Part shown: in pieces, positions 12,984 through 61,484 of the stretch
How positions within the stretch are numbered: the first letter of the stretch is position 1
Layout: each line of letters opens with the position of its first letter
The notes under the pieces: model-generated
Told to the model about the DNA's origin: nothing
The model's database searches: none
Seen by the model: only the letters and a program-made list of their open reading frames with translations
Translations under genes and position numbers: made by a program
Virus record (IMG/VR): IMGVR_UViG_3300021338_000003
Location: 186,818-250,817 of that record
Length of the DNA: 64,000 bases
Reading direction: 5' to 3' (one strand)

Positions 12984-15034
12984 TGTTCAAGACATTCTCG
13001 AATGACAAAAGGTCTGTGTTTGGGTCCGGAACCCCTGCACACGCCATCCGCAAGTCCAAGGGGGCAGCAGCTGTCACCGCCGGCAATATTCGTCGGTCCA
13101 AAAACAGTGAAAGGGACTTCATCAACAAGGTGGTTACTGCCCAATCCGACTTCGGGCTGGACCGATACAACCCGGTGCACGATGACCTTGAGGAAGGATC
13201 GGTTGTTGAGAACTGGGTCCCAAAGGACCTCCCCAGTCTCAATCGGCTGATGCGCCGCATCTATCGTCGAGACGATGTCGGCGGCCCAATGGTCGACATC
13301 TATCAGGAAATGGCATGGTCAGACTACGATCTGACCGGCATGGAAGACGAGGCCATGTACGAGCCATATGCTCAGTCCCTGGCCAACCTCAACCCTATGG
13401 ACTGGATGCCTGATATTTCAAATACCGTCTTGGTGGACGGTCGCGGTATCTATGGTCTCCTGTTCGATGAGGCTGAGGGGGTATTCACAGGCTCTGTCCC
13501 TCATGATTCCTCCTTCTGTCGAATCACCCCTGTCCCTATCTTCGGGCAGGACCCCTTGGTTGACATCCAGGCCAGCCCGGTGTGGCGCAACTTCGCCACC
13601 AGCAACGACCCTCGTATGGCGGAGATGCGAAGCTCCCTGCCCCCGAACATTCTCAAAGTTCTTCGAGACAACACGGGATATACCCCCCTTGATCCTCTGA
13701 GCACCGTCATTGTACGTCGGCAAGCTTCGGCTCATGACCACCTAGGAACCTCAATATACACCCGCCTCATCAACTTCATTGCCATCCAGAAGGCTCTAAT
13801 TGATACCACTGTCATAGCCCTTCGTCGGCGTGGCGCTGGCCTCCTGCATATCCAAGTTGGCAACGAGGTGTGGGAACCTACTGATGACCAGTTGGACGCC
13901 ATCGCCGCCATGTGGATGGGTGCCGAGGAGGACCCGGGCGGTGGTGTTGTGGTGACTCGCAACGGAATCCAAGCAGACCGAAGCCAAAGTGCTGTTGGTG
14001 ACATCTGGAAATTCAGTGACGAATATCCCTTCCTATCCGAGGGGAAGATGCGGTCCTTGGGAATTTCCGATGCCTTTCTATCTGGGGATGCCACGTACAA
14101 TAACATGGCCAACGCCCTGTCGGTCTTCATGGAGCGTCTGCGTGGTTTCCGCATGCGCATCACGAACAAGGTGCTAGTGCAGCGGGTGTTCCACACCCTG
14201 GCTCGGGTCCACGGATATATCAAGCCCGAAAAGAACTCCCCGCAGGGTCGCCGTCAAGCCTTCTTGATGCCTCTACGTCAGGCCCTCGAAGTCCCTGCTG
14301 ACCGCCTCATTGTGCCTGACATCCATTGGCACAAGAGCCTTCAGCCTCAGGGTGATGAGGAGCTGATCCGTCTCCTTGAAACCCTGAAGGAGAACGGACT
14401 GCCGGTCACCAAGCAGCACTTCGCTGCTGCCGCCGGGTTCAACCTCAACAAAGCCATGGATATGCTTGAGGATGACATCAAGCAGGAAGAGGAAGTTCGG
14501 AAGTGGCGAGCTGAGATTGAAGGTGGTGACGAGGAAGGGATTTTTGGTCGGGTCCGTCTCGTACCCCACACCATCCAGCAAATCAAGAAGCCTCGGGAAC
14601 TCCGTGTTGCAGCCTCGAAGGCCCTGGAGGACCTCGGGTTCTTCCGGAACGGACCCTTCCTGGGACTATCTCTCCAGCGTGCCCAACGGGCCCTAGACCG
14701 GATGCTACCCGACCTGAAGAGGGATGGAGAACGGGCACCCTTGCGGACCATCATGGCCGATGTTGACCTGGAACGAGAGCAACGCAATGTTATGCGCTAC
14801 CTCTTGGTCCGACTAGGCTTCGCACCCTCCTACCAAATGAACGACCAGCGCCTCGAAAGAGTGGCTCGGGCTATTGCACAAGCGCTCCCGGCCCGTGAAG
14901 CCCACCAGGAGATTGAGCTTCTAGTGAAGGTCTGCGGGGGTAAGAAGGAGCATTACGCCGAGCGCGTAACACGTCTCCCTAACGGTCCGAGTGGGGCTCA
15001 TCTCCTCACGGGTTATGTTCCGCCAGGAATGTAA
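12983..15034 (+). CDS. Portal protein
   Basis: Position after terL; size; GPMVDIYQEMAWSDY, GTSIYTRL, KMRSLGISDAFLSGDATYNN pattern resembles large-phage portals. Confidence 0.8.
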   Translation: MFKTFSNDKRSVFGSGTPAHAIRKSKGAAAVTAGNIRRSKNSERDFINKVVTAQSDFGLDRYNPVHDDLEEGSVVENWVPKDLPSLNRLMRRIYRRDDVGGPMVDIYQEMAWSDYDLTGMEDEAMYEPYAQSLANLNPMDWMPDISNTVLVDGRGIYGLLFDEAEGVFTGSVPHDSSFCRITPVPIFGQDPLVDIQASPVWRNFATSNDPRMAEMRSSLPPNILKVLRDNTGYTPLDPLSTVIVRRQASAHDHLGTSIYTRLINFIAIQKALIDTTVIALRRRGAGLLHIQVGNEVWEPTDDQLDAIAAMWMGAEEDPGGGVVVTRNGIQADRSQSAVGDIWKFSDEYPFLSEGKMRSLGISDAFLSGDATYNNMANALSVFMERLRGFRMRITNKVLVQRVFHTLARVHGYIKPEKNSPQGRRQAFLMPLRQALEVPADRLIVPDIHWHKSLQPQGDEELIRLLETLKENGLPVTKQHFAAAAGFNLNKAMDMLEDDIKQEEEVRKWRAEIEGGDEEGIFGRVRLVPHTIQQIKKPRELRVAASKALEDLGFFRNGPFLGLSLQRAQRALDRMLPDLKRDGERAPLRTIMADVDLEREQRNVMRYLLVRLGFAPSYQMNDQRLERVARAIAQALPAREAHQEIELLVKVCGGKKEHYAERVTRLPNGPSGAHLLTGYVPPGM

Positions 15035-19063: not shown

Positions 19064-19902
19064 TGAACCCTCTTGAAAAGATTCTGACCGCCTATACCAT
19101 CGAAGAGCCCCGGGATCGTCCCGAGGAACCCGAATACCCCTTCGAAGCCCAAATCGAGTATCAGGGGCTGGCCCTAGACATCGAGAATCTTAAGGGGAGC
19201 ACTCGATCTGGCGTCGACGAAAATGGTAACAAGTGGGAATCGACCATGTATGCTCACTACGGTGAGCTTCGCGGTCAAAATGCTCCTGACGGTGATTACC
19301 TTGATGTTTTTGTAGGCCCCGAAGATGACGCCCAATGGGTATTCGTGGTCCACCAGGTGCACCCGGGCGGGCACGAGAAGGCAGGCCAATTCGACGAAGA
19401 CAAGGTGATGCTGGGGTTCTCTTCTGCGGACGATGCCATCTCCTGCTACCTCAAGCACTATGACCGCCCTGACTACTTCGGTGGAGTGACCATGGTATCA
19501 ATGCCTGAGTTCAAGGCGTGGGTCAGCCATCCAGACTCTGATAGTAAGCCCGTCCAACCACCCGCCCAATGGAAAACCGACTATCTTCGTCCGAGGAAGA
19601 AAGACATGAACATTGAAGCCATGTCCAACCCACTGACCCGGACGAAGGAAATCATCCGGACCCTGGAAGAGAAACTTCGGGCCGCCCAGAAGAAGCTGAA
19701 GAAGGCAAGGGCAAATCACAAGAAGGCCACGACCATCACGCAAAAGGTGCGGTACAACACGGCCGTGAAGTGGCACCAGAAGACCGTCAAAAGCTTGAAG
19801 CAGGAAATCCGCGAGGAAAAGCAAGTCCTCCGAGATGACACCAAGCTTTTGAAGAAGGAGAAGAAGGCGTCTCTTGAAACGGTGATCGCCAAGTTCTCAT
19901 AG
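19063..19902 (+). CDS. Inorganic-pyrophosphatase-like (InPase) domain protein with a basic coiled-coil tail
   Basis: IENLKGSTRSG..W...M.AHYGEL..PDGDYLDVFVGP...VFVVHQ...FDEDKVMLGF is the InPase signature found in phage polyvalent proteins. Confidence 0.8.
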   Translation: MNPLEKILTAYTIEEPRDRPEEPEYPFEAQIEYQGLALDIENLKGSTRSGVDENGNKWESTMYAHYGELRGQNAPDGDYLDVFVGPEDDAQWVFVVHQVHPGGHEKAGQFDEDKVMLGFSSADDAISCYLKHYDRPDYFGGVTMVSMPEFKAWVSHPDSDSKPVQPPAQWKTDYLRPRKKDMNIEAMSNPLTRTKEIIRTLEEKLRAAQKKLKKARANHKKATTITQKVRYNTAVKWHQKTVKSLKQEIREEKQVLRDDTKLLKKEKKASLETVIAKFS

Positions 19903-19903
19903 G

Positions 19904-19932
19904 TTGACATATCTGTTGTGCCATGTTATAAT
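19904..19932 (+). promoter_or_regulatory. Perfect consensus sigma70 promoter P2
   Basis: TTGACA-tatctgttgtgccatgt(17)-TATAAT. Confidence 0.9.
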
Positions 19933-19952: not shown

Positions 19953-20885
19953 ATGAGCATCAAGAAGGTCATCGAGAAGTACGAAACCACCGCTTCTATG
20001 AGCCGCCAGGACTTCAACCAAGCCGTTCAGAAGGTTTGGGGAGGAGAAACCCCGGAGGGGTTGGTTGTCATCAGTCCCACTGAGTTTGCGTCCCACAGGG
20101 GGCTGTCATCTGACGCAAAGTCGATGATTCGAAAAGAACCGAAGGTGCCGGATACCAGACACCGCGGTCGGACGGAGTGGCTTCCATCTCAGTATATCCA
20201 GAACTGGGATTGGAACAATGGTGGTCTCTCCATCAGTTGGAACTGGGAGCAGAGGAAGGTCATCCTTCCCGAGGGGTGGGAGGACGACCGCAAGTTCATT
20301 CGATCTGTCAATGACTTCTATACCGCAGTGAAGGAGCAACTCCGGGTCACCGAGGAGGGGTGGATTGTCTACTCCTCTCGGGGCATCGTAGGGAGTGTGT
20401 CCCGACAATTTGGGGTTTCTATGAACCGTGCCGAGGCCGTCTTTGAAAAGAACAAGGATGAAGCTCTCCGGCAGACGGAAATCATGAGGATTCGACTGCC
20501 CATCGCCAGTCCTGTGAATGGGAAGGTCCTCATGATTCGCGACGAGCAAAGCGTAGTCGACTTCCTGGGGACCAAGCTCAAAAAGTCTCCTGACTTGTAC
20601 GTGTACGTCGAAGGATATGCCGAGGCCCCCCAAGACCCGGATGAGGAAGTCGATTCCTACAGCGCGTTTGATGGGTGGTCTCAGAAGGACCTCATCCTCG
20701 AACACATTGCCGACATTGATGCATTCGAAGCTGACCGCGACGGGCATTCGGTCATGGCCCTGTGCGGTCCCTTCAAGAGCGCGGCTGCAAAAAGAGCCTT
20801 CATGAAGAAGATTGGCCTCAGCTCAAGGCAAGAGAAGAAGAACCGCGAAACCGCCAAGGCATACGGAACCTTCCAGTCCTACTAG
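19953..20885 (+). CDS. Hypothetical protein with the MSIKKVIEKYETTAS leader
   Basis: GGAG SD; member of the shared leader family. Confidence 0.7.
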   Translation: MSIKKVIEKYETTASMSRQDFNQAVQKVWGGETPEGLVVISPTEFASHRGLSSDAKSMIRKEPKVPDTRHRGRTEWLPSQYIQNWDWNNGGLSISWNWEQRKVILPEGWEDDRKFIRSVNDFYTAVKEQLRVTEEGWIVYSSRGIVGSVSRQFGVSMNRAEAVFEKNKDEALRQTEIMRIRLPIASPVNGKVLMIRDEQSVVDFLGTKLKKSPDLYVYVEGYAEAPQDPDEEVDSYSAFDGWSQKDLILEHIADIDAFEADRDGHSVMALCGPFKSAAAKRAFMKKIGLSSRQEKKNRETAKAYGTFQSY

Positions 20886-21372: not shown

Positions 21373-21774
21373 ATGAGCATCAAAGAAGTAATTGCAAAGT
21401 ACAAAGTCACTGCCTCGGGCCATGATCAAGAGATGATTAGCCATAGTCATGACTGGGTCAAATATGTTGACACAGAGGGGTGGGATCGACTATGGGATGA
21501 CAGTCTCAGACACGTCGCTCCCGAGGGCTACCTCAGGCATATTGAAGATGATGACTTGCAGTACCACATCATCATCTGGCTTGATGAAAGACTCTATGAC
21601 TTCTTGAAGGAGAAGGGCATGGAGATAGACGGAAGAAAGTGGGATGAGGACCTCTCGCAAGCTAGACAAAAGATGATAGAGGTTGCTTGCAGAAAGTCCG
21701 ACATACTTGAAGGACGTATCAGGCCAGAAGAAATAGAGAAGGTTATCAAGAGCATACCCGATTACATCACCTGA
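21373..21774 (+). CDS. Hypothetical protein with the MSIKEVIAKYKVTAS leader
   Basis: AGGAG SD before the ATG at 21373. Confidence 0.7.
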   Translation: MSIKEVIAKYKVTASGHDQEMISHSHDWVKYVDTEGWDRLWDDSLRHVAPEGYLRHIEDDDLQYHIIIWLDERLYDFLKEKGMEIDGRKWDEDLSQARQKMIEVACRKSDILEGRIRPEEIEKVIKSIPDYIT

Positions 21775-21819
21775 GGTTCCTGGGCGCTAGGTGGAAGATA
21801 TCAAATGAGGTATCTTCCT

Positions 21820-22686
21820 ATGTCCAAGATGATCACAGGACTGGCAGAAATCGACCCCTACAACCCTCTTGTGGTGTTGGAGGGGTCGAAGATTATCGAG
21901 GAAGTGCGCGAGTCTATCGTGGGGTCGGGCTCCGATCGGAGACTTGAGCGTACCGCGGTTGTGGCTTCTACCACCGAGGGTGGGTCCATCAAGCGGCGCC
22001 CCATGGATGTGTCCTGGCTGGCTGGCGCCAGTGAGGCATACAATATATCAGCCGATGTCCGGGACTACATCTTCGTTAATGTTCCGATCGTCACGGCCGA
22101 TTTCCCTAACCGAAACATGGACTGCTTCACGTATGAGGAGCTGACTACTTTCAGCCCAGTTCTGGGTCGCTTCGTCTACGGGTCTTTCAAAGCCAAGCCG
22201 ATGCACCTCAACCACAAGAACAAGAACCCCCTAGAGGCCAAGGGGGTCCACTTCGATGCCACACTCCGGAAGTACAAAGTATGGCCTGGGAAGCAAGGGT
22301 ATCAGAGCAACAACACCCAGCCTCGCGAACTCTGGAAGGTTCGGGTCATGTTGGGAGCTTGTCGCCAGAAAGACCCCAAGGTTGCCCAGAGCATCCTTGA
22401 CAAAAAGCGCACCGGGTATTCTATGGGTGCCTGGATCGACCACGCCTTCTGCTCGGTCTGCCACAATGACAACATGCGCCAGAAGTGCACCCACCGCCAG
22501 CGGGGCAAGGGTTCCATTTCCGCTGACGGCCGCTTGGTATATGACTGCGTGGCTGGTGTCAACTTCTTCGAAACCTCGGTCCTCGATGAAGAGCCGGCAG
22601 ACCCTGATGCCTGGGCTCCCGATGGTGTTTGGGCCCCACACCTGCAGCCCAACATCTGGGCATCCTCCTTGGAGGCTGTGCTGTGA
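21820..22686 (+). CDS. Prohead protease (jumbo-phage type, with Zn-binding insert)
   Basis: PNRNMDCF, MHLNH, YSMGAW..FCSVC...C.H, FFETSVLDEEPADPDA; upstream of scaffold and MCP. GAGGT SD before 21820; ORF track start is 21805. Confidence 0.75.
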   Translation: MSKMITGLAEIDPYNPLVVLEGSKIIEEVRESIVGSGSDRRLERTAVVASTTEGGSIKRRPMDVSWLAGASEAYNISADVRDYIFVNVPIVTADFPNRNMDCFTYEELTTFSPVLGRFVYGSFKAKPMHLNHKNKNPLEAKGVHFDATLRKYKVWPGKQGYQSNNTQPRELWKVRVMLGACRQKDPKVAQSILDKKRTGYSMGAWIDHAFCSVCHNDNMRQKCTHRQRGKGSISADGRLVYDCVAGVNFFETSVLDEEPADPDAWAPDGVWAPHLQPNIWASSLEAVL

Positions 22687-22970
22687 GCGACTATATATAC
22701 CTTGAAGTCACCGTTCTGGTCAGGCACCCCGAGAAGTTCGAGGGATTCAACTTCGAAAATGCAGCAAAGGACCTGGGCCTTTCACCTGACCGGCGAGGAA
22801 ACACCCTCCCTATTCGCACTGACCCTAGAATGGCCAGTGTTCACTTCTGGGGTCGATTCCCTATGGGGCCCGGGCTGCAGGACTCCATTCAGAGGCGTGC
22901 CGAGTCCGCACTCAGTCCCCTGGGCGTGCGTCGAGTTATCATCAGAGCACCTACGCCGAGGTTCATGTGA
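22683..22970 (+). CDS. Small hypothetical protein
   Basis: GTGA overlap with the protease stop. Confidence 0.5.
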   Translation: MSDYIYLEVTVLVRHPEKFEGFNFENAAKDLGLSPDRRGNTLPIRTDPRMASVHFWGRFPMGPGLQDSIQRRAESALSPLGVRRVIIRAPTPRFM

Positions 22971-23554
22971 CTATCCGCCATATCATCCGGGAGCAAATGG
23001 AAATCGAGGCTGCTGTCCCCGCCTGGCTGGCGTCCATGGGTGGAGCCGCAGTTGCCGTCGGTCTTCGTTTTGCCTTGAAGAAGGTGCTCCAGTCTGCGAT
23101 GAAGGCCATGGCCAAGCAAGCAGCCAAGAAGGCTGCCCAGCAGGGCGCGAAGAAAATCACCCAGAAGGGTGCCCAGAAGGTATTGATGAATCCGAAGGTT
23201 ATCAAGCCGGCCATGCGGAGAAAGATTGCTCAGAAGGGTATATCCGATTCCGAGATTGATGAGGTCATCAAAAACATGGACTCGTCAGTGGGCGAGAAAG
23301 CCCAGAAACTCGTGTTCTCCTATCTGGTTGAGAAGGGTACAGCCAACAAGACCCTAACCGAACAGGATGTGGCAGACCTCAAGGCCGGAAAGGCTCCGAA
23401 GGGTACCACTTCTCCTACCGCCAGTGGGAAGAAGGGAAAGAACGGCGAAAAGCCCCCGAAGGGCTACGAAAAAGTCAAGAGTAGCAAGAAAAATGCATAT
23501 CGTCGCAAAAAGGACGATGGCACGTACGACTACTGGTACCCCTCCAAGAAGTGA
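22967..23554 (+). CDS. Basic hypothetical protein with a leader ending IEAA, then a hydrophobic VPAWL segment
   Basis: MTIRHIIREQMEIEAAVPAWLASMGGAAVAVGL; shares this segment with ORF 34450..35310. Confidence 0.65.
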   Translation: MTIRHIIREQMEIEAAVPAWLASMGGAAVAVGLRFALKKVLQSAMKAMAKQAAKKAAQQGAKKITQKGAQKVLMNPKVIKPAMRRKIAQKGISDSEIDEVIKNMDSSVGEKAQKLVFSYLVEKGTANKTLTEQDVADLKAGKAPKGTTSPTASGKKGKNGEKPPKGYEKVKSSKKNAYRRKKDDGTYDYWYPSKK

Positions 23555-23631: not shown

Positions 23632-23730
23632 CCGTCTCGAAGTGCCACTGCTTCTACCCAAAGTGGACCATGCACCCTACCTCTTGAATTTTGAATCCAC
23701 CGCATGGAAAATACCTCAAAGGAGTATACC

Positions 23731-25872
23731 GTGCCGAATGACCTCCGCAAGATTCGCGCAAAGCAGCAGCAGATGGACGCTATCACTGCTTCCATGGATG
23801 AGGGCAACACTGACGAGATGCCCACGAACGAAGATGGGAATGGTGCCGAAGCTGGTAGTGATACCGTTGACCTCGATTCTCTTGACCTCTCTGCCTACAT
23901 GGACGAGTCCAATGTAACCGCCGCCCCTATTGTCACCGCCGCAGACGACTGCGATGAGGACGAGGACGAGGATGAGGATGATGAGGACGAGGATGATGAG
24001 GACGATGGCAAGGCTACCGCTGGTTTCCAGAAGGGTGACAGCAAGTCTGATGACTCCGATGACTCTGATGATTCCGACGACTCTGATGATTCCAACGACT
24101 CTGACGACTCTGATGATTCCGACGACTCTGATGAGAAGGGCAAGGCCGAGGCCATGACTTCCGAGGCCCGTTGGTTCGAGGACCACGTTGCCGCTGCCCT
24201 GATCGACGCCGGCCTCAACGACCTCGAAATCGACACCCGAGAGGCAGCTGCCACTTCCCTGTCGAACCGTGCTCACATCGAGGGTTCTGCCTTCATCCAG
24301 GCCATGTCCGATGATGATTTCAGTCGGATGCAGAAGGATATGGTTCCCCTCTACCAAGAGACTCTTCGTATCACCAAGAAGATCCGCGAGGCCCAGGCCG
24401 AGGCTATGAAGGTTCAGGAAAACCTTCGCGCCAACAAGAAGGTCGAGGCTGCTGCTGACATGGGCCGCGAAATTCGTGACGCTATGTTCCAGGATATCGA
24501 AGACTCGAACCTCGACTATCATGCCCCCCAGTGGCTTCAGACCCTCGTGGCTGGCTTCTTGGGCAGCGATTCCAAGGAGACTCAGATGGATACCCCGACC
24601 GTTGAGGAGCGTGCGGCTGCTGCGGCGCCGGAGACAGCCCCCACGAAGCCCAAGAAGCCCAAGAAGCCCGCTGCTCACAAGCCTCGGACGGCCAGTGTGA
24701 AGCCTAGCCCTCGGAAGACCAGCCCCATTCAGGCTGCTTTCGAGGCCACGGCTACAGCTGTTGCTGAGATGGTCAAGATTGGCGATCTCCCCGGCGCTGC
24801 TCGCCTCGTCTGCTTTGAGGACTCTGAGGATGCCCGTCAGGCCGTTCAGGTCATGGCTGGTCTCGTGAAGTCTGGCCAGCATTCCCGGGCTGCCCATATG
24901 GTCAACGACCTTCGCACGGCTGTTCTTACGGCTCCCAAGCAGGAGGGTGGTGAGGCCCAAGGTGAGGTCACCGCTGGTGTTGAAGCTGCTCAACCGATGC
25001 ATGCTGTCCTTCTGGCCCAGCCCAAGGACTTCGGTGAGGTCAGCGAGGATGAGGTGTCCGTCATCCTCCACGCCGAGGCTTCCGAGGATCCCTACTACAC
25101 TGTCATCGTGCAGGGTATGCCGGTGGGTGAGATTCACCTTGCCGACCAGGGTGACCCCGATGAGTATCGTGCGACCTTCGCCGATGTCAATGTCTACGGT
25201 CGTGGTATCCGTCACGCCGTAGCCAACTTCGGTGTCGAGGATGCCCTGAGCAACTTCGAGGCTCGCTATTTCGTCACCGCCTTCGATAGCCACGCCGAGA
25301 TGGGTCGCATCAAGGATGAGGCTGCTGCTCTGGCTGCCGAGGCTATCAACGCCAAGGTTGCCGAGGCTACTGCGGAGATCGTGGACTTCATGATCCTCGC
25401 CCACGAGGGTATCCGTCGCAACGCCTACACCGTCGACGATCCACTGAAGTTCTCCCTGTACGAGACCCTCAAGAGCGCCGGTGTACGTGAGGCCAACATC
25501 CCCAATTTGGTAGAGCAGGCCATCAACATGCCCCTAGCCGTCGATGGCAGCAACGAGCGTACCGCTGCTATGTCGATGTACCTGGAGATCCTCGCTGAGA
25601 AGGCCAAGGAGTTCCAGAATATGGACCCGGCTGCTCTGGAGCACATCACCAAGACCATCATCAACGCCCCTGTCCGTAGCCGTTCGGCCTCGGTTGAGGC
25701 GGTGGCCATGCCCCAGACTCTCCGCGAGCGTCTTGCCAGCAACAACCAGCCGGTCATCAATGTGGGAGATCCGATCACCCCGGACCCCCACCCCTCCACT
25801 TCGAATAGCACTGCCGAGGATCTTCGCCGTGCTCTCGATCTGAGTCACGGATATCGGAACCGTCGGTCCTGA
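23731..25872 (+). CDS. Prohead scaffold/core protein
   Basis: Very acidic Ala-rich protein between protease and MCP; AAGGAG SD before GTG 23731 (ORF track start 23704); highly biased codons. Confidence 0.7.
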   Translation: MPNDLRKIRAKQQQMDAITASMDEGNTDEMPTNEDGNGAEAGSDTVDLDSLDLSAYMDESNVTAAPIVTAADDCDEDEDEDEDDEDEDDEDDGKATAGFQKGDSKSDDSDDSDDSDDSDDSNDSDDSDDSDDSDEKGKAEAMTSEARWFEDHVAAALIDAGLNDLEIDTREAAATSLSNRAHIEGSAFIQAMSDDDFSRMQKDMVPLYQETLRITKKIREAQAEAMKVQENLRANKKVEAAADMGREIRDAMFQDIEDSNLDYHAPQWLQTLVAGFLGSDSKETQMDTPTVEERAAAAAPETAPTKPKKPKKPAAHKPRTASVKPSPRKTSPIQAAFEATATAVAEMVKIGDLPGAARLVCFEDSEDARQAVQVMAGLVKSGQHSRAAHMVNDLRTAVLTAPKQEGGEAQGEVTAGVEAAQPMHAVLLAQPKDFGEVSEDEVSVILHAEASEDPYYTVIVQGMPVGEIHLADQGDPDEYRATFADVNVYGRGIRHAVANFGVEDALSNFEARYFVTAFDSHAEMGRIKDEAAALAAEAINAKVAEATAEIVDFMILAHEGIRRNAYTVDDPLKFSLYETLKSAGVREANIPNLVEQAINMPLAVDGSNERTAAMSMYLEILAEKAKEFQNMDPAALEHITKTIINAPVRSRSASVEAVAMPQTLRERLASNNQPVINVGDPITPDPHPSTSNSTAEDLRRALDLSHGYRNRRS
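24046..24132 (+). repeat. Imperfect 9-bp tandem repeat encoding (SDD)x10 in the scaffold
   Basis: tct/tcc-gat/gac-gat/gac units. Confidence 0.85.
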
Positions 25873-25878
25873 TGCTTC

Positions 25879-25897
25879 GGGGATATTTGATATCCCC
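25879..25897. terminator. Hairpin after the scaffold gene, containing the reverse GATATCAAAT motif
   Basis: ggggatat-ttg-atatcccc. Confidence 0.5.
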
Positions 25898-25970
25898 ATC
25901 ACCTCTTCAATCACCTCAATAGATATCAAATAGGGTGGAAATCCCATCCGCCAAACAAGGGAAAATCACA

Positions 25971-26711
25971 ATGGCAATCGACCTCAAGAAGACCGACTCC
26001 GATCTCGATATCGAAGTCCCTCTGGGCCTCGGCCAGTCCTTCACCGAGGAAGGCCAGCTCGTCATTGGTACGCTGGCCTCCGGTGAGGAAGTGGCGAATG
26101 TTGGGACCGCAGCGGCCAGCCTGAAGCTTCTCGGCTTCGCCAAGCTGGACACCGTGTCCCCGGCTTCGACTCGGACCTTCAGCACCACGGGTACCATCCC
26201 GAGTGCTGCAGCCTATACCATCAGCATCGGTCACACCCTCGTGACCAGCGACATCAATGCTGATGGTGATGTCCGGGTGCAGCGTGTTGATACGGGTGCC
26301 TACCTCACTCTCGCTTCTGGTGCTCCGGCGTCCGGTGAGTTTCAGCTTTCCGACGCAGCCAACGGTGTCCTGACCTTCAACTCGGCTCAGGCTGGGCTGC
26401 AGGTCCGCATCTGGGCCCGGGTGACCATGAGTGCCCGTGAGCGTGATGGTCTGTACCAGCAGCGCCACATCAACAGCAACGCTCAGGGAGACCTGGAGCG
26501 CGTTGGTGTGATCTCGGGTACCGGCGTCATCTACACCGACCAGTACGACATGTCCGTCACGGATTGGACGTCTGGCGATCTCCGCACCGGTGCGGGTGGC
26601 GTGATCACCGTTGGTGGTGGTGGCACTGTCCTGGACGGCTCGGTTTCCGTCATCCACGTTCCGAGCCTCGACGAGCCTATGCTCGGCCTGCGGTTCACCC
26701 TCGGCCGCTGA
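25971..26711 (+). CDS. Head decoration/cement-like structural protein
   Basis: Lies between scaffold and MCP; Gly/Thr beta-rich; start context ggaaaatcacaATGGCA matches the MCP context ggaaaatcaaaATGGCA. Confidence 0.55.
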   Translation: MAIDLKKTDSDLDIEVPLGLGQSFTEEGQLVIGTLASGEEVANVGTAAASLKLLGFAKLDTVSPASTRTFSTTGTIPSAAAYTISIGHTLVTSDINADGDVRVQRVDTGAYLTLASGAPASGEFQLSDAANGVLTFNSAQAGLQVRIWARVTMSARERDGLYQQRHINSNAQGDLERVGVISGTGVIYTDQYDMSVTDWTSGDLRTGAGGVITVGGGGTVLDGSVSVIHVPSLDEPMLGLRFTLGR

Positions 26712-26724
26712 GGCTAGACCTTCG

Positions 26725-27237
26725 ATGCGCTACCTGAATGACATTCTAGCCAAGATAATCTTGGTTCGTGATTCCCTTCGGGAGAAGGGTCAGCAGAAGC
26801 ATGCTGCTGACCTGGACGCTCACGCGGGCGCACTATACTTCCTCGGGGCTGGAGACAGCTCCGAAATTACCTCTCATGCACCTGATACCTCTGATTCCGA
26901 GCGGGTGGCTCGACTGTCTGGCCAAGAAAAGGCCAGACTGCGCCGCCTCAAAAAGAGAAGGGCCAACAAGCGTCCTGCGCGTAAGCGCTATGTCTGTTGC
27001 ACCCCTCTCGAAAAGCGTCGTACCCGTCGTGGGACGGCGTGGGCTAGCGTCTGTCACTATGTAGTCACGAGTGGAAAGCGTCGTGGTCAAATGGCCGCTT
27101 CCTCTATCATGGTCTCCTACGGAAATCAAAAACCGAAGGCAATCATCGTCAAAGAGAGTGGTCGTGATCGTCGAATGAGCTTCTGTCGAAGTGGTCAACT
27201 AGAGCGGGCAAAAGCCAAGTTCGCAAAGAAAGCCTGA
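26725..27237 (+). CDS. Basic hypothetical protein in the head cluster
   Basis: Arg/Lys-rich C-terminal half. Confidence 0.55.
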   Translation: MRYLNDILAKIILVRDSLREKGQQKHAADLDAHAGALYFLGAGDSSEITSHAPDTSDSERVARLSGQEKARLRRLKKRRANKRPARKRYVCCTPLEKRRTRRGTAWASVCHYVVTSGKRRGQMAASSIMVSYGNQKPKAIIVKESGRDRRMSFCRSGQLERAKAKFAKKA

Positions 27238-27261
27238 CATCAGGAACAGAGGAAAATCAAA

Positions 27262-28443
27262 ATGGCAAACCCCTACGGAAAGTTTTCGGGTGCTACCACC
27301 CAGATGGTGCTTGCGGGCACTGATGCTCCGGTTGTGAGTGAAGCTCGCAACTTCGGTCGCACTGTCACTGGCTCCGTCCAGCAGTCCGGCTCCGGCCTTG
27401 CGCCCACCTCCCGTGGCCTAGCCCACGGTGGCGGTGAGCGTCTGTTCGGCGCCAATGGCGAGATCAATGCCTCCAGCAAGCGCGAGCTGATGGAGAAGAT
27501 CGGCCTCCTGCTTGACCAAGCCCAGCATGGTGGCTTCGAGCGCCAGATGACCCCCGAGTACAGCCGTGTGGCCCAGGCCCGTGCTGTTGCTCTCGCCGAA
27601 GCCCAGGCCAACCCCGACGGTCCCGGCATGCGGATCATCGCCGAGGCGACCGGCAACGAGGTCTTCGAGACTCTCGGCCGTGATGGTCTCGTGCGTCAGT
27701 TCCTCCTGATCAACGACCTCAATGGTAGTGACGACGTCAACCGCGTCAAGGTCCGGAAGAAGGACGTGTCCGCGGTCATCTCAACCACGAACATCAACAC
27801 CACCAAGCAGATGGTTCGCCAGATGTGGGTGTACCCGGGCGAGTACTACGTCAAGTCCTTCGTCTCCATTGAGGAGAAGGAGCTGTCGCAGAACGGTGCC
27901 GAGATGCTCGACGAGAAGTTCACGGACATGCTTGAGCAGCACATGGTCCAAGAGGACCGGCACATGAAGAGCCACTTCGATGACCAGGTGGGTATCGTCA
28001 ACCCCGGGCTGACCTTCAACAAGTTCACCCCGCTCATCTTCACCCAGGCTCGCGTGGCTGTCGAGGAGCAGGGCAACCCCTGTGTCCGCGCTGCCCTCTC
28101 CTGGGACCTCTGGGTCGACATTCTCGCTGAGCCGGAGTTCGCCAACTACTTTGACCCGGTCCACAAGCACGCTGCCATCCTCGATGGCAAGCTCGGCGCC
28201 ATCCAGAACGTCCAGCTCTACACCGACGGCTTCCGGTACGATACCCTGCAGGTGCTCGGCACCCGTGAGGTCTACTTCACCGGTCCGGCGGCTACGGTCG
28301 GTGTCCTGGGTCAGCGGAGCCCGATCCAGACGAAGGAGACGGATCGCTACAACCTCGGCCAGGCCGAGCGTGGATGGTTCTCCTTCCAGATCCAGTCCAT
28401 GACCACGTTCCCCCGTGCCGTGAGCCGCGCTCGCGGTATCTGA
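27262..28443 (+). CDS. Major capsid protein
   Basis: 393 aa; follows protease, scaffold and decoration genes; extreme C-ending codon bias; strong terminator; HK97-like size. Confidence 0.8.
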   Translation: MANPYGKFSGATTQMVLAGTDAPVVSEARNFGRTVTGSVQQSGSGLAPTSRGLAHGGGERLFGANGEINASSKRELMEKIGLLLDQAQHGGFERQMTPEYSRVAQARAVALAEAQANPDGPGMRIIAEATGNEVFETLGRDGLVRQFLLINDLNGSDDVNRVKVRKKDVSAVISTTNINTTKQMVRQMWVYPGEYYVKSFVSIEEKELSQNGAEMLDEKFTDMLEQHMVQEDRHMKSHFDDQVGIVNPGLTFNKFTPLIFTQARVAVEEQGNPCVRAALSWDLWVDILAEPEFANYFDPVHKHAAILDGKLGAIQNVQLYTDGFRYDTLQVLGTREVYFTGPAATVGVLGQRSPIQTKETDRYNLGQAERGWFSFQIQSMTTFPRAVSRARGI

Positions 28444-32419: not shown

Positions 32420-32860
32420 ATGGGCAAAATGAACGTGTCCAAAATCAGTGAAGTAACGGCAAAATACGAAGTCCTTGCAAGCCGTCAAGGAATGCATAAT
32501 GACTTTTTGGAGCGCGCCTACAATATACTAGACGACGCAGGAATTGACAGATCGTCCGTCAAGACTGGAACTCACGGAAGAGACTGGTATTGGGTGAGCT
32601 TCGAACTTCCGAAGGGGGACTTGTGGTACGAGTGGAGACCCGGTATCGTCTCTCCAGAGACCCAGTCCGGGGAGTCTATCACACTTCGACGGAGGCACAG
32701 ACATAGCAGGCACCCGTCATCCCCCTCTTCCTTTGGGGACGCCCTGGTGAATGTATACAACCCTGCAGAATCCTCCTTCGGGGATGTCTGGCTCTCCGAC
32801 CAAGATATCAGAAATGCCCATTCCGATATCTTGGACGTAATCGAAGGAAAGTACCTCTGA
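32420..32860 (+). CDS. Hypothetical protein with a leader variant (SKISEVTAKYEVLAS)
   Basis: GGAG SD; member of the leader family. Confidence 0.65.
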   Translation: MGKMNVSKISEVTAKYEVLASRQGMHNDFLERAYNILDDAGIDRSSVKTGTHGRDWYWVSFELPKGDLWYEWRPGIVSPETQSGESITLRRRHRHSRHPSSPSSFGDALVNVYNPAESSFGDVWLSDQDIRNAHSDILDVIEGKYL

Positions 32861-32911: not shown

Positions 32912-33775
32912 ATGGGATACGAACAGGCACTTTCGACCAAGAAGCTGGCCACCCACTGCATCCTGTGTGGTCAGCCGCTCCGGGACCCCATCTCGGTTGA
33001 GACTGGTGTTGGTCCGATTTGTCGTGCCAAGAACGGCTACAATGAGGCTGGCAACCCCGAGACCCGTGTCCAGTGTAGCAAGCTCATCCATGCTGCTGCT
33101 CAGCCGGGCTTGACTGCCACCGAGGTCTACGACTACGCCGACCAGATCGAGGCCCTCGGGTTCCCTGATGTGGCCGCCAAAATCCGGGAACGGTTCCATC
33201 GGGCCTACGAATACGAGCAGCGGGGAACCCTCCCAATCAAGATGAAGAGGGAGAATTACCGCCAGTGGACCGACGCCATCTGGATGCACATCCCCTACGA
33301 TGCCGAAACAACCAAGAAGTTCAACCAAGCCTTGAAGGACCGCATTTGGTCCAGTTATCGGACGGGCACGAAGGATGACACTGGAACTTTCTGGTGGATC
33401 GTCGACCCGAAGCGGGCTGACGCCGTCGACGCTCTCCTCCGGGAGTTCTATACCGGTCGTATGTGCCACTCCTCGTTCGGAGACTTCATCATCGGCGAGG
33501 AACTCGGAGGTGGTGATACCGAGAAGGCCCCTCAGGAGGAAGCCCCTCCAGTCCCTGGTCCCCCTGCAGCGACGCCCGGAGCCTCTACCCCCTCGTTTGG
33601 AGGTAGTGGCGGAAAGGGAGGCAGCGGCGGCGAGTGGACCCCCATCCCCGGCCCGAGCGGATCCAAGACGTCGACCCCCGATGACCCCATCACCCCCTCG
33701 CGCAGCCCCCGTGAGGTGGCCGCGGAGCGTGGGCGTGCCCGGGCCGAAGAACTTTTGAAATCTCTGGGATTGTGA
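32912..33775 (+). CDS. DUF6011-like Zn-binding early protein
   Basis: CILCGQPLRDPISVETGVGPICR signature; AGGAGG SD; Pro/Gly/Ser-rich tail. Confidence 0.65.
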   Translation: MGYEQALSTKKLATHCILCGQPLRDPISVETGVGPICRAKNGYNEAGNPETRVQCSKLIHAAAQPGLTATEVYDYADQIEALGFPDVAAKIRERFHRAYEYEQRGTLPIKMKRENYRQWTDAIWMHIPYDAETTKKFNQALKDRIWSSYRTGTKDDTGTFWWIVDPKRADAVDALLREFYTGRMCHSSFGDFIIGEELGGGDTEKAPQEEAPPVPGPPAATPGASTPSFGGSGGKGGSGGEWTPIPGPSGSKTSTPDDPITPSRSPREVAAERGRARAEELLKSLGL

Positions 33776-34374
33776 TGGACCCTCGGCTACTACCCTTCGA
33801 CACCTGGTACAAAGCCAGGTTGCGCTCCGACGCCCCCAAGGATGTGGCCGACATTTTCCGAGGCCACACCAGGCCCTTCGTATATCTGCTCCGCACCCCA
33901 AGCAACATTCCAGTGCCCCGCTTCAAATTGGGCCGATTTGTTGCCTGGAGCGGGGCAGATCGTACCCATGGTCACCTGACCGCGGAAAAGATTAGGGACT
34001 CCTTCGAAATCCTTCAGGTCCATGACGACCAGGAAAACCTCAATGAACGGACCAAGAGATTGTTCCGCAGGAAAAAGCAAATGAGCAAGATGGACGAAGT
34101 TGTTGCGAAGTACGAGAACGAGGTCACAGCCTCCCAGAATGGCCAATTCTACAACGATGAGGGGGAGGAACTTGACGCAGAAGAAGTTGAGAGTCATGTC
34201 GAAGCCACTCTCAAGGAGTTGGAGAAGCTCAAGAAGCAGACAGAAGACTTCCAACGTAAGCTCAAGGCCGGCAGTCTGAAAACGGAGGATGGGTTTATGT
34301 CGTTCATGTCCGTGATCATCCATGGGTATGACCAAACGGGACCTGTGGGCATCAGCTTCGAGTCCAACGATTAG
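33772..34374 (+). CDS. Hypothetical protein with a probable internal second start at 34081 (MSKMDEVVAKYENEVTAS)
   Basis: The internal ATG is preceded by AGGA and begins a leader-family peptide. Confidence 0.55.
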   Translation: MMDPRLLPFDTWYKARLRSDAPKDVADIFRGHTRPFVYLLRTPSNIPVPRFKLGRFVAWSGADRTHGHLTAEKIRDSFEILQVHDDQENLNERTKRLFRRKKQMSKMDEVVAKYENEVTASQNGQFYNDEGEELDAEEVESHVEATLKELEKLKKQTEDFQRKLKAGSLKTEDGFMSFMSVIIHGYDQTGPVGISFESND

Positions 34375-34449: not shown

Positions 34450-35310
34450 TCAGCTGGACATCTTCCAGCCTTCGTCATCCTCCAATTCGGACATAGCCTT
34501 CTCCCAATCCGATGGGTGAACCTTCAGGGCCCGCATGGTCTGGTTCATTTCATTGGATACCTGACGAGTGTTGGTAATGGCCCGTCCAGCCAGGGACAAA
34601 CGTTCGGTAACCTTGATTACATCCTTGAGGATGTCGGTCTTCGAACGACTGTAGAGGTAGGGAATGAGACGGCCGATGGCCACCGACATCACGACAGCAG
34701 TGGCTGCCATACCCACGTCTTTGATGAGCCCTACCTTGAGGTACTTGAGAACTCCACGGGCCAGGCTATCTACGACACGACCAGCACGGTCCTTGCGCTT
34801 CTGAAGAAGGGTGTTGTTGACCGAGGCAGCTGTCTTGAAGAAGACTTCCAAGTCACGCTCGGAAGCAGACGTTCCCAGGGCTCCCAGGAGCTGGGATATA
34901 GCCTCGACATTTCCAGCCATTTCATCTTTCCAGAAGGTTACCATGGTGCGGAGGTACAAGGTCAGAACACGCATCAGGACGGTCACTGCGAGGTAGGCCC
35001 CTGCCTGCCCCAGCCATGCCGGGATGGCGGCCTCGACCTGCTTGCGCTCAATGAGATGGGACAGTCGAGTGGCAGCCGTGGCCTTGGTCTTACCGTCGGC
35101 ACCAGGCTCGTCCTTGGAATTCCACTCATCATCGACCTCTTCGAAGAAGTCCTTCTTCTCGCTGTCAGACAGGTCCGAAATCTCATCGATTCCATGCTCC
35201 TTCATCTGACCCTTCATATAATTCTGCCAGTCCTTCTCATGCTCGGTCGTGGCAGGATTTCCATCCTTAGCCACCCGGTAGCGATCGACGACATCTTTGA
35301 TCGACATCAT
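34450..35310 (-). CDS. Hypothetical protein with the MSIKDVVDRY leader and internal VEAAIPAWL
   Basis: AGGAG SD; start overlaps the upstream stop. Confidence 0.7.
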   Translation of the reverse strand: MMSIKDVVDRYRVAKDGNPATTEHEKDWQNYMKGQMKEHGIDEISDLSDSEKKDFFEEVDDEWNSKDEPGADGKTKATAATRLSHLIERKQVEAAIPAWLGQAGAYLAVTVLMRVLTLYLRTMVTFWKDEMAGNVEAISQLLGALGTSASERDLEVFFKTAASVNNTLLQKRKDRAGRVVDSLARGVLKYLKVGLIKDVGMAATAVVMSVAIGRLIPYLYSRSKTDILKDVIKVTERLSLAGRAITNTRQVSNEMNQTMRALKVHPSDWEKAMSELEDDEGWKMSS

Positions 35311-46121: not shown

Positions 46122-46508
46122 ATGAGCATCAAAGAAGTCATCGCAAAATACAGCATCCAAGCTAGTGCGTCAGAATGGAGTATTGGTATATATGATACCA
46201 ATGGAAACCCCAGCAAGAAGTTCAAATCACTTCCTGATAACCCCTCCCAAGAAGACGTCGCTAGAGCGTCCGAAGGTAGTGGTGGCAGGGACTACATAAG
46301 TGTCTTCAAGTCAGGAAGAGACTGGGCTGTGATGGCAGGGACTTATGGTCCCAGAGATATCGCGTTCTATGTTGTGGCATTGAAGGGCAAGCACAACAGC
46401 ATCGCCTCTGACATCGAGAATGCTGTGCATACCCTAGAGGACTTCGACCCCTACGACTACACCGAGGAAGAAGTCGTAACGGCAATCATGAGACACTTCA
46501 AATTGTGA
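46122..46508 (+). CDS. Hypothetical protein with the MSIKEVIAKYSIQAS leader
   Basis: Leader DNA is 27/30 identical to that at 21373. Confidence 0.7.
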   Translation: MSIKEVIAKYSIQASASEWSIGIYDTNGNPSKKFKSLPDNPSQEDVARASEGSGGRDYISVFKSGRDWAVMAGTYGPRDIAFYVVALKGKHNSIASDIENAVHTLEDFDPYDYTEEEVVTAIMRHFKL

Positions 46509-61102: not shown

Positions 61103-61145
61103 GATTCCTAAACAGATTCAGGACATAGCCAGGAGGGCTAGAAAA

Positions 61146-61484
61146 ATGAGCAAGATGAATGGCTTTGGGGTAGCATTTGAGTCCGAAGGCGACTTCTACG
61201 GTATGGAGGGGGCCATCCAGGAGATGCAAAGTGCCACTTGCGGTGCTATCTTCGATGGGCGCGGGGAACTCATAGTCGTTACAAACGACGAGCGATGCAG
61301 CCTAGAAGACTTCATCTCGGAATACGGCAGGATGTATGGCGAGAGCTATGCCCCCAGCAAAAAAGAAGTGGTGAAGACACATAACGTGACCGGAGACGTC
61401 ACTGCCACGAGCAAGATGGATGAAATTGTGGCGAAGTACAAGAACGAAATCACGGCGGCGGGGGACATTCGTTTGAAGGACTAG
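61146..61484 (+). CDS. Hypothetical protein ending in a copy of the leader peptide
   Basis: AGGAGG upstream; C-terminus TSKMDEIVAKYKNEITAAGDIRLKD. Confidence 0.55.
   Translation: MSKMNGFGVAFESEGDFYGMEGAIQEMQSATCGAIFDGRGELIVVTNDERCSLEDFISEYGRMYGESYAPSKKEVVKTHNVTGDVTATSKMDEIVAKYKNEITAAGDIRLKD

What the first reader, a model, noticed from the sequence alone, without database searches (positions are those of the whole stretch)
23731..27480. Recurrent (V/I/A)-(T/E/N)-A-(A/S/G/M) sites in scaffold and capsid define a putative prohead-protease site
The scaffold contains NVTAA, IVTAA, KATAG, KAEAM, KVEAA, EVTAG and GVEAA, mostly at the ends of low-complexity blocks. The MCP N-terminal arm has EINAS, and the leader family ends in TTAS/VTAS/IQAS/IEAA. 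Other proteins contain internal IEAM (19606 region), IEAS (45573 ORF) and VEAA (34450 ORF) at apparent module boundaries. Inference: the 21820 protease cleaves after Ala (P1), unlike the Glu specificity of the T4 and phiKZ proteases, and several ORFs are processed polyproteins.
Basis: partly seen in the sequence, partly recalled or inferred. Interest (0 to 1): 0.7.

Follow-up and report, generated by a model that had tools for sequence, protein, structure and literature searches.

The report
Alanine-specific prohead protease sites, shared leaders
In this 251-kb jumbo phage, the capsid, portal and scaffold proteins and eight small leader-bearing proteins carry a conserved x-(T/N/Q)-Ala motif that probably marks where the head protease cuts, after alanine as in herpesviruses and not after glutamate as in phage T4; no experiment has tested this.

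Summary
His motif occurs 11 times in the 722-aa scaffold-like protein against about 1.5 expected.

The tetrapeptide alone is too loose to predict sites genome-wide. Conservation carries the argument.
- G-E-(I/L/V)-N-A of the major capsid protein (A70|S71) is present in 86 of 88 homologues, and also in Ralstonia phage phiRSL1. The next residue varies.
- Eight proteins of this genome share an N-terminal leader: an amphipathic helix, a spacer of variable length, then phi-(T/Q/L)-A-(S/A). phiRSL1 has an equivalent family ending in (E/D)-V-x-A.
- The portal and four scaffold positions keep x-(T/S/Q)-A at the borders between variable and conserved sequence.
- The protease has the T4 gp21 / herpesvirus assemblin fold, with invariant His137, Ser206 and Glu256.

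Best reading: a prohead protease that cuts after Ala, at phi-x-A|S/G/A. This matches the herpesvirus assemblin site pattern and differs from the T4/phiKZ rule of cutting after Glu. The leaders would then be cleavable capsid-targeting propeptides.

The "polyprotein" claim is supported for only one ORF. All of this is inference from sequence. Verdict: partly supported, a new variant of a known kind.

The parts
21805..22686 (+). Prohead (head maturation) protease, 293 aa. Putative catalytic residues are His137 (22213-22215), Ser206 (22420-22422) and Glu256 (22570-22572). A Cys-rich insert (C216, C219, C228) lies between Ser206 and Glu256.
   Evidence: phrog_18299 E=3.6e-44; no Pfam hit. AF2 model pLDDT 83.9. 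Structural matches: T4 gp21 5jbl Z=10.3, VZV protease Z=8.1, HCMV protease Z=6.3. Invariant residues in 71 homologues.
22597..22611 (+). Protease C-terminal tail A265-D-P-D-A269, a possible self-cleavage site about 24 aa before the C-terminus.
   Evidence: A265 is invariant. Four residues later Ala is present in 59 of 71 homologues, preceded by (D/F/Y)-(P/V/I)-(T/S/D), with 5-18 residues left after it in most. Inference only.
23704..25872 (+). Scaffold-like acidic, low-complexity protein, 722 aa, with a conserved C-terminal domain (about aa 340-720).
   Evidence: The gene order protease / small gene / this gene / 250-aa gene / 170-aa gene / MCP is kept in five metagenomic relatives and in phiRSL1. 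Alignment A2.
23782..23793 (+). Scaffold site ITA|S (aa 27-30), just before the acidic region.
   Evidence: Aligned with RTA|D, RTA|G and RSA|G in homologues. phiRSL1 has RVLA|A at aa 10.
23914..23943 (+). Scaffold NVTA|A and IVTA|A (aa 71-80), between two acidic blocks.
   Evidence: Present. Not conserved by position in homologues. phiRSL1 has two KTTA|AE sites in its acidic region.
24727..24738 (+). Scaffold site IQA|A (aa 342-345), at the end of the Pro/Lys-rich linker and before the conserved domain.
   Evidence: Aligned with TTA|S, VTA|S, VLA|S and VTG|S in four homologues while the flanks differ.
24967..24978 (+). Scaffold site G-E-VTA|G (aa 422-425).
   Evidence: Aligned with EVKA|Y, ECKA|Y and ACKA|Y. 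Same pattern as the G-E-I-N-A|(G/Y) variants of the MCP site.
25681..25692 (+). Scaffold site RSA|S (A662), 60 aa before the C-terminus.
   Evidence: A662 is invariant. It aligns with RTA|S, VTA|A, KTA|E and RAA|S. phiRSL1 has KVQA|A 24 aa before its C-terminus.
27262..28443 (+). Major capsid protein, 393 aa.
   Evidence: phrog_2522 E=7e-35; 88 homologues; AF2 model pLDDT 79.
27460..27474 (+). MCP site E67-I-N-A70|S71, proposed border between propeptide and mature protein.
   Evidence: N69 and A70 are invariant; G66 and E67 are nearly so. G-E-(I/L/V)-N-A in 86 of 88 homologues; next residue S46/G18/Y16/other. phiRSL1 ORF136 has GANGELNAS. The helix at 73-88 begins right after the site, and 1-70 is mostly coil.
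19953..19997 (+). Leader of the 310-aa protein, ending in ETTA|S.
21373..21417 (+). Leader of the 133-aa protein, ending in KVTA|S.
46122..46166 (+). Leader of the 128-aa protein, ending in SIQA|S.
32429..32482 (+). Leader of the 143-aa protein, ending in EVLA|S.
34081..34134 (+). Leader ending in NEVTA|S, lying inside ORF 33772-34374; probably a nested in-frame start.
35263..35307 (-). Leader of the 285-aa protein, ending in RVA|K (deviant).
35026..35037 (-). Internal VEA|A (aa 104-107 of ORF 34450-35346), followed by IPAWL and a hydrophobic domain.
   Evidence: The same block, EIEA|AVPAWLA, lies 12 aa from the start of ORF 22967-23554.
23003..23014 (+). IEA|A near the start of ORF 22967-23554.
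   Evidence: The stretch from the internal Met at 22997 resembles the phiRSL1 leader family.
61410..61460 (+). Leader-like sequence ending in NEITA|A, only 8 aa before the stop of ORF 61056-61484; probably a remnant.
13130..13141 (+). Portal (12902-15034) site VVTA|Q, a few residues before the conserved portal core.
   Evidence: Portal identified by phrog_16240 E=2e-100. Aligned with IRTA|S and LRTA|D in two relatives, ahead of the shared (D/E)RYNP core.

Best explanation
The window holds the head-assembly module of a 251-kb jumbo phage distantly related to Ralstonia phage phiRSL1. Its prohead serine protease (21805-22686) has the T4 gp21 / herpesvirus assemblin fold, with putative catalytic His137, Ser206 and Glu256. 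It most likely recognises a short non-prime-side motif: (E/D preferred)-(V/I/L/T, or R in relatives)-(T/N/Q/L)-Ala. It would cut directly after the Ala, with a small or variable residue following.

Proposed substrates (all inferred):
- The MCP, with 70 residues removed at EINA|S.
- The portal, at VVTA|Q.
- The scaffold-like protein, at conserved positions near aa 30, 345, 425 and 662, and probably at further sites between its low-complexity blocks, so that the core breaks into fragments that can leave the head.
- Eight proteins that share a 12-20 residue N-terminal leader. The leader would act like the T4 capsid-targeting sequence, bringing the protein into the prohead and then being clipped off.
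- Possibly the protease's own C-terminal tail.

What is shown: the fold, the invariant residues, the gene order, the conservation of the motifs and the protein-level selection on the leaders. What is inferred: that cleavage happens at all, which bond is cut, and that the leader proteins are packaged.
For: Protease: phrog_18299. The model matches T4 gp21 at Z=10.3, then the VZV, HCMV and KSHV proteases. H137, S206 and E256 are invariant in 71 homologues.

MCP: N69 and A70 are invariant, and G-E-phi-N-A is found in 86 of 88 homologues while the N-terminal 30-95 residues and the residue after Ala vary. The motif is also in phiRSL1 at 28% overall identity. A helix starts right after the site.

Leaders: there are eight members. 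The helix element and the phi-T-A-S element are separated by 1-6 variable residues, and similarity ends right after the motif. The members differ in synonymous codons, including TCN versus AGY for Ser, and have unrelated upstream DNA, so selection acts on the peptide. phiRSL1 has a parallel family of 6-7 leaders ending in (E/D)-V-x-A.

Scaffold: a motif defined only from the MCP and the leaders is enriched in the window scaffold (5 vs 1.2, p about 0.005) and in phiRSL1 ORF134 (6 vs about 1, p<=0.001). Four sites are conserved by position.

Portal: the site is conserved by position.

Protease of relatives: FITA|(R/K) aligns with the first residues of the window protease.

Against: There is no experimental datum for this phage or for any relative that I could reach. 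All characterised proteases of the closest structural match (T4 gp21, phiKZ gp175, SPN3US gp245) cut after Glu (PMC5694885; PMC12991175), and Glu is frequent four residues before the proposed break. The proteins are Ala-rich, so conserved Ala is common: 15 of 55 invariant scaffold columns are Ala. The independent motif is not significantly enriched in two of five scaffolds. One leader ends in VAK, and one phiRSL1 leader has no clear site. The model of protease with the MCP arm gave no verdict.
Confidence: 0.62

Rival explanations
1. The sites are real processing sites, but the bond that is cut differs. Either the cut is after the conserved Glu four residues upstream (G-E|I-N-A, N-E|V-T-A), as for T4-type proteases, or for the MCP alone an Asn-driven self-cleavage occurs at N69|A70.
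For: The best structural match is T4 gp21, whose characterised relatives all cut after Glu. Glu is at that position in 85 of 88 MCPs, in 5 of 8 leaders and in most phiRSL1 leaders. N69 is invariant.
Against: Three window leaders (KVTAS, SIQAS, RVAK), the portal site and the scaffold sites near aa 30, 345 and 662, together with their homologues (IRTAS, LRTAD, VDTTAS), have no Glu there, whereas Ala is always present. Two MCPs have Gln and one has Asp. If the cut were after Glu, every mature leader protein would keep a conserved phi-T-A-S start for no evident reason. Asn self-cleavage cannot explain the T-A, Q-A and L-A sites.
Confidence: 0.12
2. The conserved motifs are not cut. G-E-I-N-A would be a structural or assembly contact of the capsid N-arm, and the shared leader a permanent targeting or interaction tag, or a signal for something other than head assembly.
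For: Conservation alone cannot separate a cleavage signal from a binding element. The MCP model gives moderate confidence (pLDDT 60-80) around residues 60-90. The InPase-domain protein at 19063 has a leader-like start with no Ala site.
Against: The same short motif recurs in unrelated contexts (MCP, portal, scaffold, leaders, protease tail), always at a border between variable and conserved sequence and always with variable residues after it. A dedicated protease gene sits in the module. N-terminal propeptides on the MCP, portal and internal proteins are the rule in jumbo phages that have such proteases (PMC5694885).
Confidence: 0.13
3. The recurrence is mostly chance in Ala/Glu/Thr-rich, partly helical proteins. 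The motif is loose and was fitted after the fact.
For: Observed/expected is already 1.25 in unrelated proteins. KATAG, KAEAM, KVEAA, GVEAA, IEAM and IEAS are not conserved in homologues.
Against: The scaffold has 11 observed against 1.5 expected, even under local shuffles. N-A is invariant across 88 MCPs. Two independent leader families end in the same motif. Chance may explain some individual scaffold sites but not the core set.
Confidence: 0.05

Closest known systems
T4 prohead protease gp21 with the capsid-targeting sequences of the internal proteins and gp24
   Same: Same protease fold (Z=10.3). Catalytic His then Ser then an acidic residue, in that order. Short shared N-terminal leaders of 10-20 residues on several small head proteins that end at the protease site. 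The MCP loses an N-terminal piece of about 65-70 residues, and the scaffold is cut into fragments (PMC5694885).
   Different: T4 cuts after Glu in I/L-x-E (PMC12991175). Here the constant residue is Ala. There is no Pfam match to the T4 protease family. The Cys-rich insert between Ser206 and Glu256 did not align to gp21 or to any solved structure in the sequence search. The leader sequence is unrelated.
phiKZ gp175 / SPN3US gp245 proteases of giant phages
   Same: Jumbo-phage setting. Many head proteins, the portal and the MCP are processed. There are several sites within long propeptides, and the protease self-cleaves at its C-terminus (PMC5694885, PMC10052503).
   Different: Their motif is (S/A/G)-x-E with the cut after Glu. 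There is no detectable sequence similarity, and the MCP family is different.
Herpesvirus assemblin (protease of HSV, HCMV, VZV, PrV) and its release and maturation sites
   Same: Related fold (VZV Z=8.1, HCMV Z=6.3). [quoted passage not shown]
   Different: Assemblin has a Ser-His-His triad; here the third invariant residue is Glu256. Assemblin is fused in frame to its scaffold; here the genes are separate, with another gene between them. Herpesviruses do not cleave their MCP. Structural similarity is weaker than to T4 gp21.
Ralstonia phage phiRSL1, ORF132-136 and the leader-bearing ORFs 123-127 and 133
   Same: Same gene order. The protease is 32% and the MCP 28% identical. The MCP has GANGELNAS. 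There is a leader family ending in (E/D)-V-x-A, and the scaffold has TTA|A, VTA|A and VQA|A.
   Different: It is a distant relative, its leader sequence differs, and its scaffold is shorter. I could not reach any paper describing processing in phiRSL1.

Membership tests
Prohead proteases of the T4 gp21 / herpesvirus assemblin fold | The characteristic beta-barrel protease fold | tested here: met
   AF2 model pLDDT 83.9. VIA-align gives T4 gp21 Z=10.3 (139 residues aligned), VZV protease 8.1, HCMV 6.3 and KSHV 5.1, with unrelated folds at Z<=5.8. The Foldseek top hit is gp21, probability 0.96.
Prohead proteases of the T4 gp21 / herpesvirus assemblin fold | Catalytic His, then Ser, then a third residue (Asp/Glu in phages, His in herpesviruses) | tested here: inconclusive
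   H137, S206 and E256 are invariant in 71 homologues and in the right order. Their proximity in space and their equivalence to the gp21 triad were not checked, because no coordinates or residue-level alignment were available.
Prohead proteases of the T4 gp21 / herpesvirus assemblin fold | Sequence match to the curated family models (Pfam families of T4-type, HK97-type or herpesvirus proteases) | tested here: not met
   No Pfam family at E<=0.1 and no PDB sequence match. The only match is PHROG 18299, 'head maturation protease'.
Prohead proteases of the T4 gp21 / herpesvirus assemblin fold | Gene located in the head module next to the scaffold and MCP genes | tested here: met
   Order portal ... 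protease / 195-aa gene / scaffold-like / 258-aa / 170-aa / MCP, conserved in relatives.
T4-type specificity (cut after Glu) | Glu immediately before every scissile bond | not testable with these tools
   The sequence pattern argues against it: Ala, not Glu, is the residue common to all the conserved candidate sites.
Herpesvirus assemblin proper | Ser-His-His triad | tested here: not met
   Only one His (H137) is invariant. The third invariant residue after Ser206 is Glu256.
Herpesvirus assemblin proper | Protease translated in frame with the scaffold protein | tested here: not met
   Separate ORFs 21805-22686 and 23704-25872, with ORF 22967-23554 between them.
Herpesvirus assemblin proper | Cleavage at phi-x-A|S | not testable with these tools
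   The candidate sites fit this pattern, but no cleavage has been observed.
T4-like capsid-targeting-sequence proteins | Short N-terminal leader shared by several otherwise unrelated proteins | tested here: met
   Eight members found with a leader profile (seven in the window, one elsewhere in the genome). Five score E 1e-7 to 4e-6 and the others are weaker. The bodies after the leader match no family.
T4-like capsid-targeting-sequence proteins | The leader directs packaging into the prohead and is removed by the prohead protease | not testable with these tools
   Inferred from the motif at the end of the leader and from the parallel family in phiRSL1.

The most novel reading that the evidence does not exclude
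This clade of jumbo-phage proteases (phiRSL1-like phages and several hundred metagenomic relatives) shares with herpesvirus assemblin the substrate rule phi-x-Ala|Ser as well as the fold. The layout would match too: a release-like site at the end of the protease domain and a maturation-like site near the scaffold C-terminus. Alanine specificity would then be an old trait of the tailed-phage/herpesvirus protease lineage, and the Glu rule of T4/phiKZ a derived one.
Probability: 0.2. Interest if true: 0.8.

Novelty: new variant of a known kind. Interest (0 to 1): 0.55.

Why it matters
Prohead proteases decide which proteins stay in a phage head and in what form. For jumbo phages the only specificity rules established so far (T4, phiKZ, 201phi2-1, SPN3US) all place Glu before the cut.

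A clade that cuts after Ala would matter in three ways. It would allow mature virion proteins to be predicted for phiRSL1-like phages and several hundred metagenomic relatives. It would identify a leader tag that could be used to load foreign proteins into these capsids, as was done with the T4 targeting sequence. It would also add a functional link to the structural one between phage and herpesvirus maturation proteases. A single mass-spectrometry run on virions would test it.

Tried and rejected
1. blastn of the region against cultured phages found nothing, and a viral-contig scan with the MCP found nothing. Relatives came from the protein searches.
2. The model of the protease with MCP residues 48-95 gave no verdict (score 0.02). 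It is not evidence either way.
3. Sequence search of PDB with the protease profile found only a spurious zinc-finger match. With the MCP profile it found only phage G gp27 (6wkk), which aligns downstream of the site and is too distant to fix the N-terminus. The phage G structure paper, the phiRSL1 structure paper, the Cheng et al. protease paper and the 1991 assemblin paper are not held.
4. No paper on processing in phiRSL1-like phages was found.
5. Genome-wide scanning with tetrapeptide patterns was rejected as a predictor, because matches are spread over all kinds of proteins.
6. Leaders as a repeated DNA element (promoter or 5' UTR) was rejected. Upstream DNA is unrelated and codons differ synonymously.
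7. A phi-x-A-(S/G) pattern about 10 residues before the conserved protease core (window AVVA|STT, aa 52-58) was considered as an N-terminal self-cleavage site. It is not claimed. It lies in a confidently modelled beta-strand, and the loose pattern matched only 39 of 71 sequences.
8. NIWA|SS at the very C-terminus of the window protease is not conserved in relatives.

Full report
**Context**

The window is the last 64 kb of a single 250,817-bp contig of 54% G+C, a jumbo phage. Between 12.9 and 28.4 kb lies a head-assembly module on the + strand:
- portal, 12902-15034 (phrog_16240, E=2e-100);
- a protein with a pyrophosphatase domain of the kind found in polyvalent phage proteins, 19063-19902 (PF18823);
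- two small leader-bearing genes, 19953-20885 and 21373-21774;
- a protease, 21805-22686 (phrog_18299, E=4e-44);
- a Lys-rich 195-aa gene;
- a 722-aa acidic protein, 23704-25872;
- a 258-aa and a roughly 170-aa gene;
- the major capsid protein (MCP), 27262-28443 (phrog_2522).

The order protease / small gene / long acidic gene / 250 aa / 170 aa / MCP is the same in five metagenomic relatives with 54-64% MCP identity. It is also the same in Ralstonia phage phiRSL1, ORF132-136. There the MCP is 28% and the protease 32% identical. No cultured phage is close at the DNA level.

Yes. All the strings are there. Whole-protein shuffles and shuffles within 60- or 30-residue blocks give 1.4-1.6, so uneven local composition does not explain it. 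Observed/expected is 7.4 in this protein, 3.8 in the other head proteins and 1.25 in the rest of the proteome.

Two cautions apply. The pattern was fitted to these very proteins. It is also loose: 79 matches to it lie all over the proteome. The tetrapeptide is therefore not a predictor, and the case must rest on conservation.

**The MCP site**

In 88 homologues, G-E-(I/L/V)-N-A is present in 86. N and A are present in all 88 scanned and invariant in the two alignments. The residue after Ala varies freely: S 46, G 18, Y 16, then V, N, A, L and D. The 30-95 residues before the motif vary in both length and sequence. phiRSL1 ORF136 has GANGELNAS.

In the AF2 model, residues 1-70 are mostly coil and a helix (73-88) begins right after the site. 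A short invariant block that ends in Ala, sits between a variable N-terminal piece and the conserved body, and is followed by a free position is what a recognition site on the non-prime side looks like.

**The leader family**

A profile built from five leaders finds eight members in the genome. Seven are in the window, at 19953, 21373, 46122, 35307(-), 32429, 34081 and 61410. One is at genome position 154,048.

There are two subtypes, MSIKEVIAKY... and M(S/N)KMDEV(I/V)AKY.... Each is followed by 1-6 variable residues and then (V/I/T)-(T/Q/L)-A-(S/A). All similarity ends after that point, and the protein bodies match no family. The variable spacer shows that the helix and the phi-T-A-S element are separate signals.

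The members use different synonymous codons. Ser is TCT, TCG, TCC, AGT or AGC. Upstream DNA is unrelated. So the peptide is under selection, not a DNA repeat.

phiRSL1 has a parallel family of 6-7 proteins: ORF123, 126 (with an earlier start), 127 and 133, and genes at 60,801 and 148,697. ORF124 has the leader but no clear site. Their leader M-x-Y-x-I-x-A-A-V-x-R-L-x-A-T ends in (E/D)-V-x-A, followed by G, A, N or P. Most of these genes sit right next to its protease.

**Scaffold-like protein and portal**

A motif defined only from the MCP and the leaders, [VILT][NTQL]A[SGYA], was tested on the scaffolds.

| Scaffold | Observed | Expected | p |
|---|---|---|---|
| Window | 5 | 1.2 | about 0.005 |
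| phiRSL1 ORF134 | 6 | about 1 | <=0.001 |
| L004 | 4 | about 1.3 | about 0.03 |
| L001 | 3 | 1.1-1.3 | not significant |
| L003 | 3 | 1.8-2.1 | not significant |

Position is more telling than counts:
- ITA|S (aa 27-30) aligns with RTA|D, RTA|G and RSA|G.
- IQA|A (aa 342-345), at the end of the Pro/Lys linker, aligns with TTA|S, VTA|S, VLA|S and VTG|S.
- G-E-VTA|G (aa 422-425) aligns with EVKA|Y and ECKA|Y, the same shape as the MCP variants.
- RSA|S (invariant A662) aligns with RTA|S, VTA|A, KTA|E and RAA|S.
- phiRSL1 has KVQA|A 24 residues from its C-terminus.

NVTAA and IVTAA lie between acidic blocks but are not conserved by position. KATAG, KAEAM, KVEAA and GVEAA have no counterpart in the homologues. 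A D-A-E-A-G unit recurs in the acidic regions of two relatives, and as NGAEAG in the window.

In the portal, VVTA|Q aligns with IRTA|S and LRTA|D just ahead of the conserved core. Because these proteins are Ala-rich (15 of 55 invariant scaffold columns are Ala), each single site is only suggestive.

**The protease**

The AF2 model (pLDDT 83.9) matches T4 gp21 best (Z=10.3). The VZV, HCMV and KSHV proteases follow at Z=8.1, 6.3 and 5.1. Foldseek also ranks gp21 first. H137, S206 and E256 are invariant in 71 homologues, and a nearly invariant Cys cluster lies between Ser and Glu. No Pfam model matches.

Near the C-terminus, after the invariant P-A-D, 59 of 71 homologues have (D/F/Y)-(P/V/I)-(T/S/D)-A, with 5-18 residues left after it in most. 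This is a possible self-cleavage site, at the place where phiKZ-type and herpesvirus proteases cut themselves.

In three relatives an N-terminal extension ends in FITA|(R/K) or FRTA|R. That point aligns with the first residues of the shorter window protein.

**Mechanism and rivals**

The simplest account is a protease that reads (E/D)-phi-x-A and cuts after Ala. It would trim the MCP and the portal, break up the scaffold core and remove targeting leaders from internal head proteins.

The main rival keeps the processing but puts the cut after the frequent Glu four residues upstream, as in T4, phiKZ and SPN3US (PMC5694885; PMC12991175). Against it, three leaders, the portal site and three of the four conserved scaffold sites lack that Glu, while Ala never fails.

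A second rival is that the motif is a contact element and is never cut. Its recurrence in five unrelated contexts, always at a border between variable and conserved sequence, speaks against that.

Chance remains a fair explanation for several individual scaffold matches and for IEAM and IEAS.

The "polyprotein" idea has one good case. ORF 34450(-) carries a leader, an acidic stretch, then QVEA|AIPAWL and a hydrophobic domain. The same block, EIEA|AVPAWL, lies 12 residues from the start of ORF 22967.

**Comparison with known systems**

The system works like the T4 arrangement of gp21 plus capsid-targeting sequences. [quoted passage not shown]

It is not an assemblin in the strict sense. The third catalytic residue is Glu rather than His, and the protease is not fused to its scaffold.

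I found no description of processing or leaders for phiRSL1-like phages in the held literature. Key older papers were not readable.

**Verdict**

It is a new variant of a known kind. I put 0.62 on cleavage after Ala at the conserved sites, and interest at 0.55.

Noticed in passing
window 8782-12693 (+): This 1303-aa ORF carries an intein splicing domain (PF14890, E=2e-21). Many homologues of the protease (600-1200 aa, matched in two or more separate stretches) and a relative's portal also seem to be interrupted by inteins.
   Followed up: partly
window 33772-34374 (+): A complete leader (MSKMDEVVAKYENEVTAS) lies at residue 104 of a 200-aa ORF with no stop in between. AGGA lies 9 nt upstream of its ATG at 34081. 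This is either a nested in-frame gene start or a leader inside a larger precursor.
   Followed up: partly
window 61410-61484 (+): A leader-like sequence ending in NEITAA sits only 8 residues before the stop of ORF 61056-61484, next to a convergent gene. It looks like a truncated remnant of a leader-bearing gene.
   Followed up: no
window 19904-19932 (+): A perfect sigma-70-type promoter (TTGACA, 17 nt, TATAAT) lies just upstream of the first leader gene. A similar CATGTTAAAAT element precedes the leader gene at genome position 154,048.
   Followed up: no
window 40354-45576 (+): A 1740-aa SNF2/DEAD-type helicase gene lies among the leader genes, as the 1555-aa helicase ORF129 does beside the leader genes and protease of phiRSL1. 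It may be a packaged protein of the DarB type. Its N-terminus has STIEA|M at aa 28-31.
   Followed up: partly
window 19063-19902 (+): The protein has a pyrophosphatase domain (PF18823) typical of polyvalent, host-injected phage proteins. It has a leader-like start (MNPLEKILTAYTIEE) that lacks the Ala motif, and a coiled-coil tail after NIEA|M.
   Followed up: partly
L001:6009-8510, L003:3242-5719, L004:6126-8534: The acidic regions of the relatives' scaffold proteins contain repeated units of the form (L/M)-(E/D/N)-I-(T/H/Q)-H-(D/E). These are absent from the window protein. Their meaning is unknown; they could be metal-binding or another kind of site.
   Followed up: no
window 22450-22494 (+), protease residues 216-230: A nearly invariant C-S-x-C ... 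C-x-H cluster is inserted between the catalytic Ser and Glu, suggesting a zinc-binding insertion. It did not align to T4 gp21 or to any solved structure in the sequence search.
   Followed up: no
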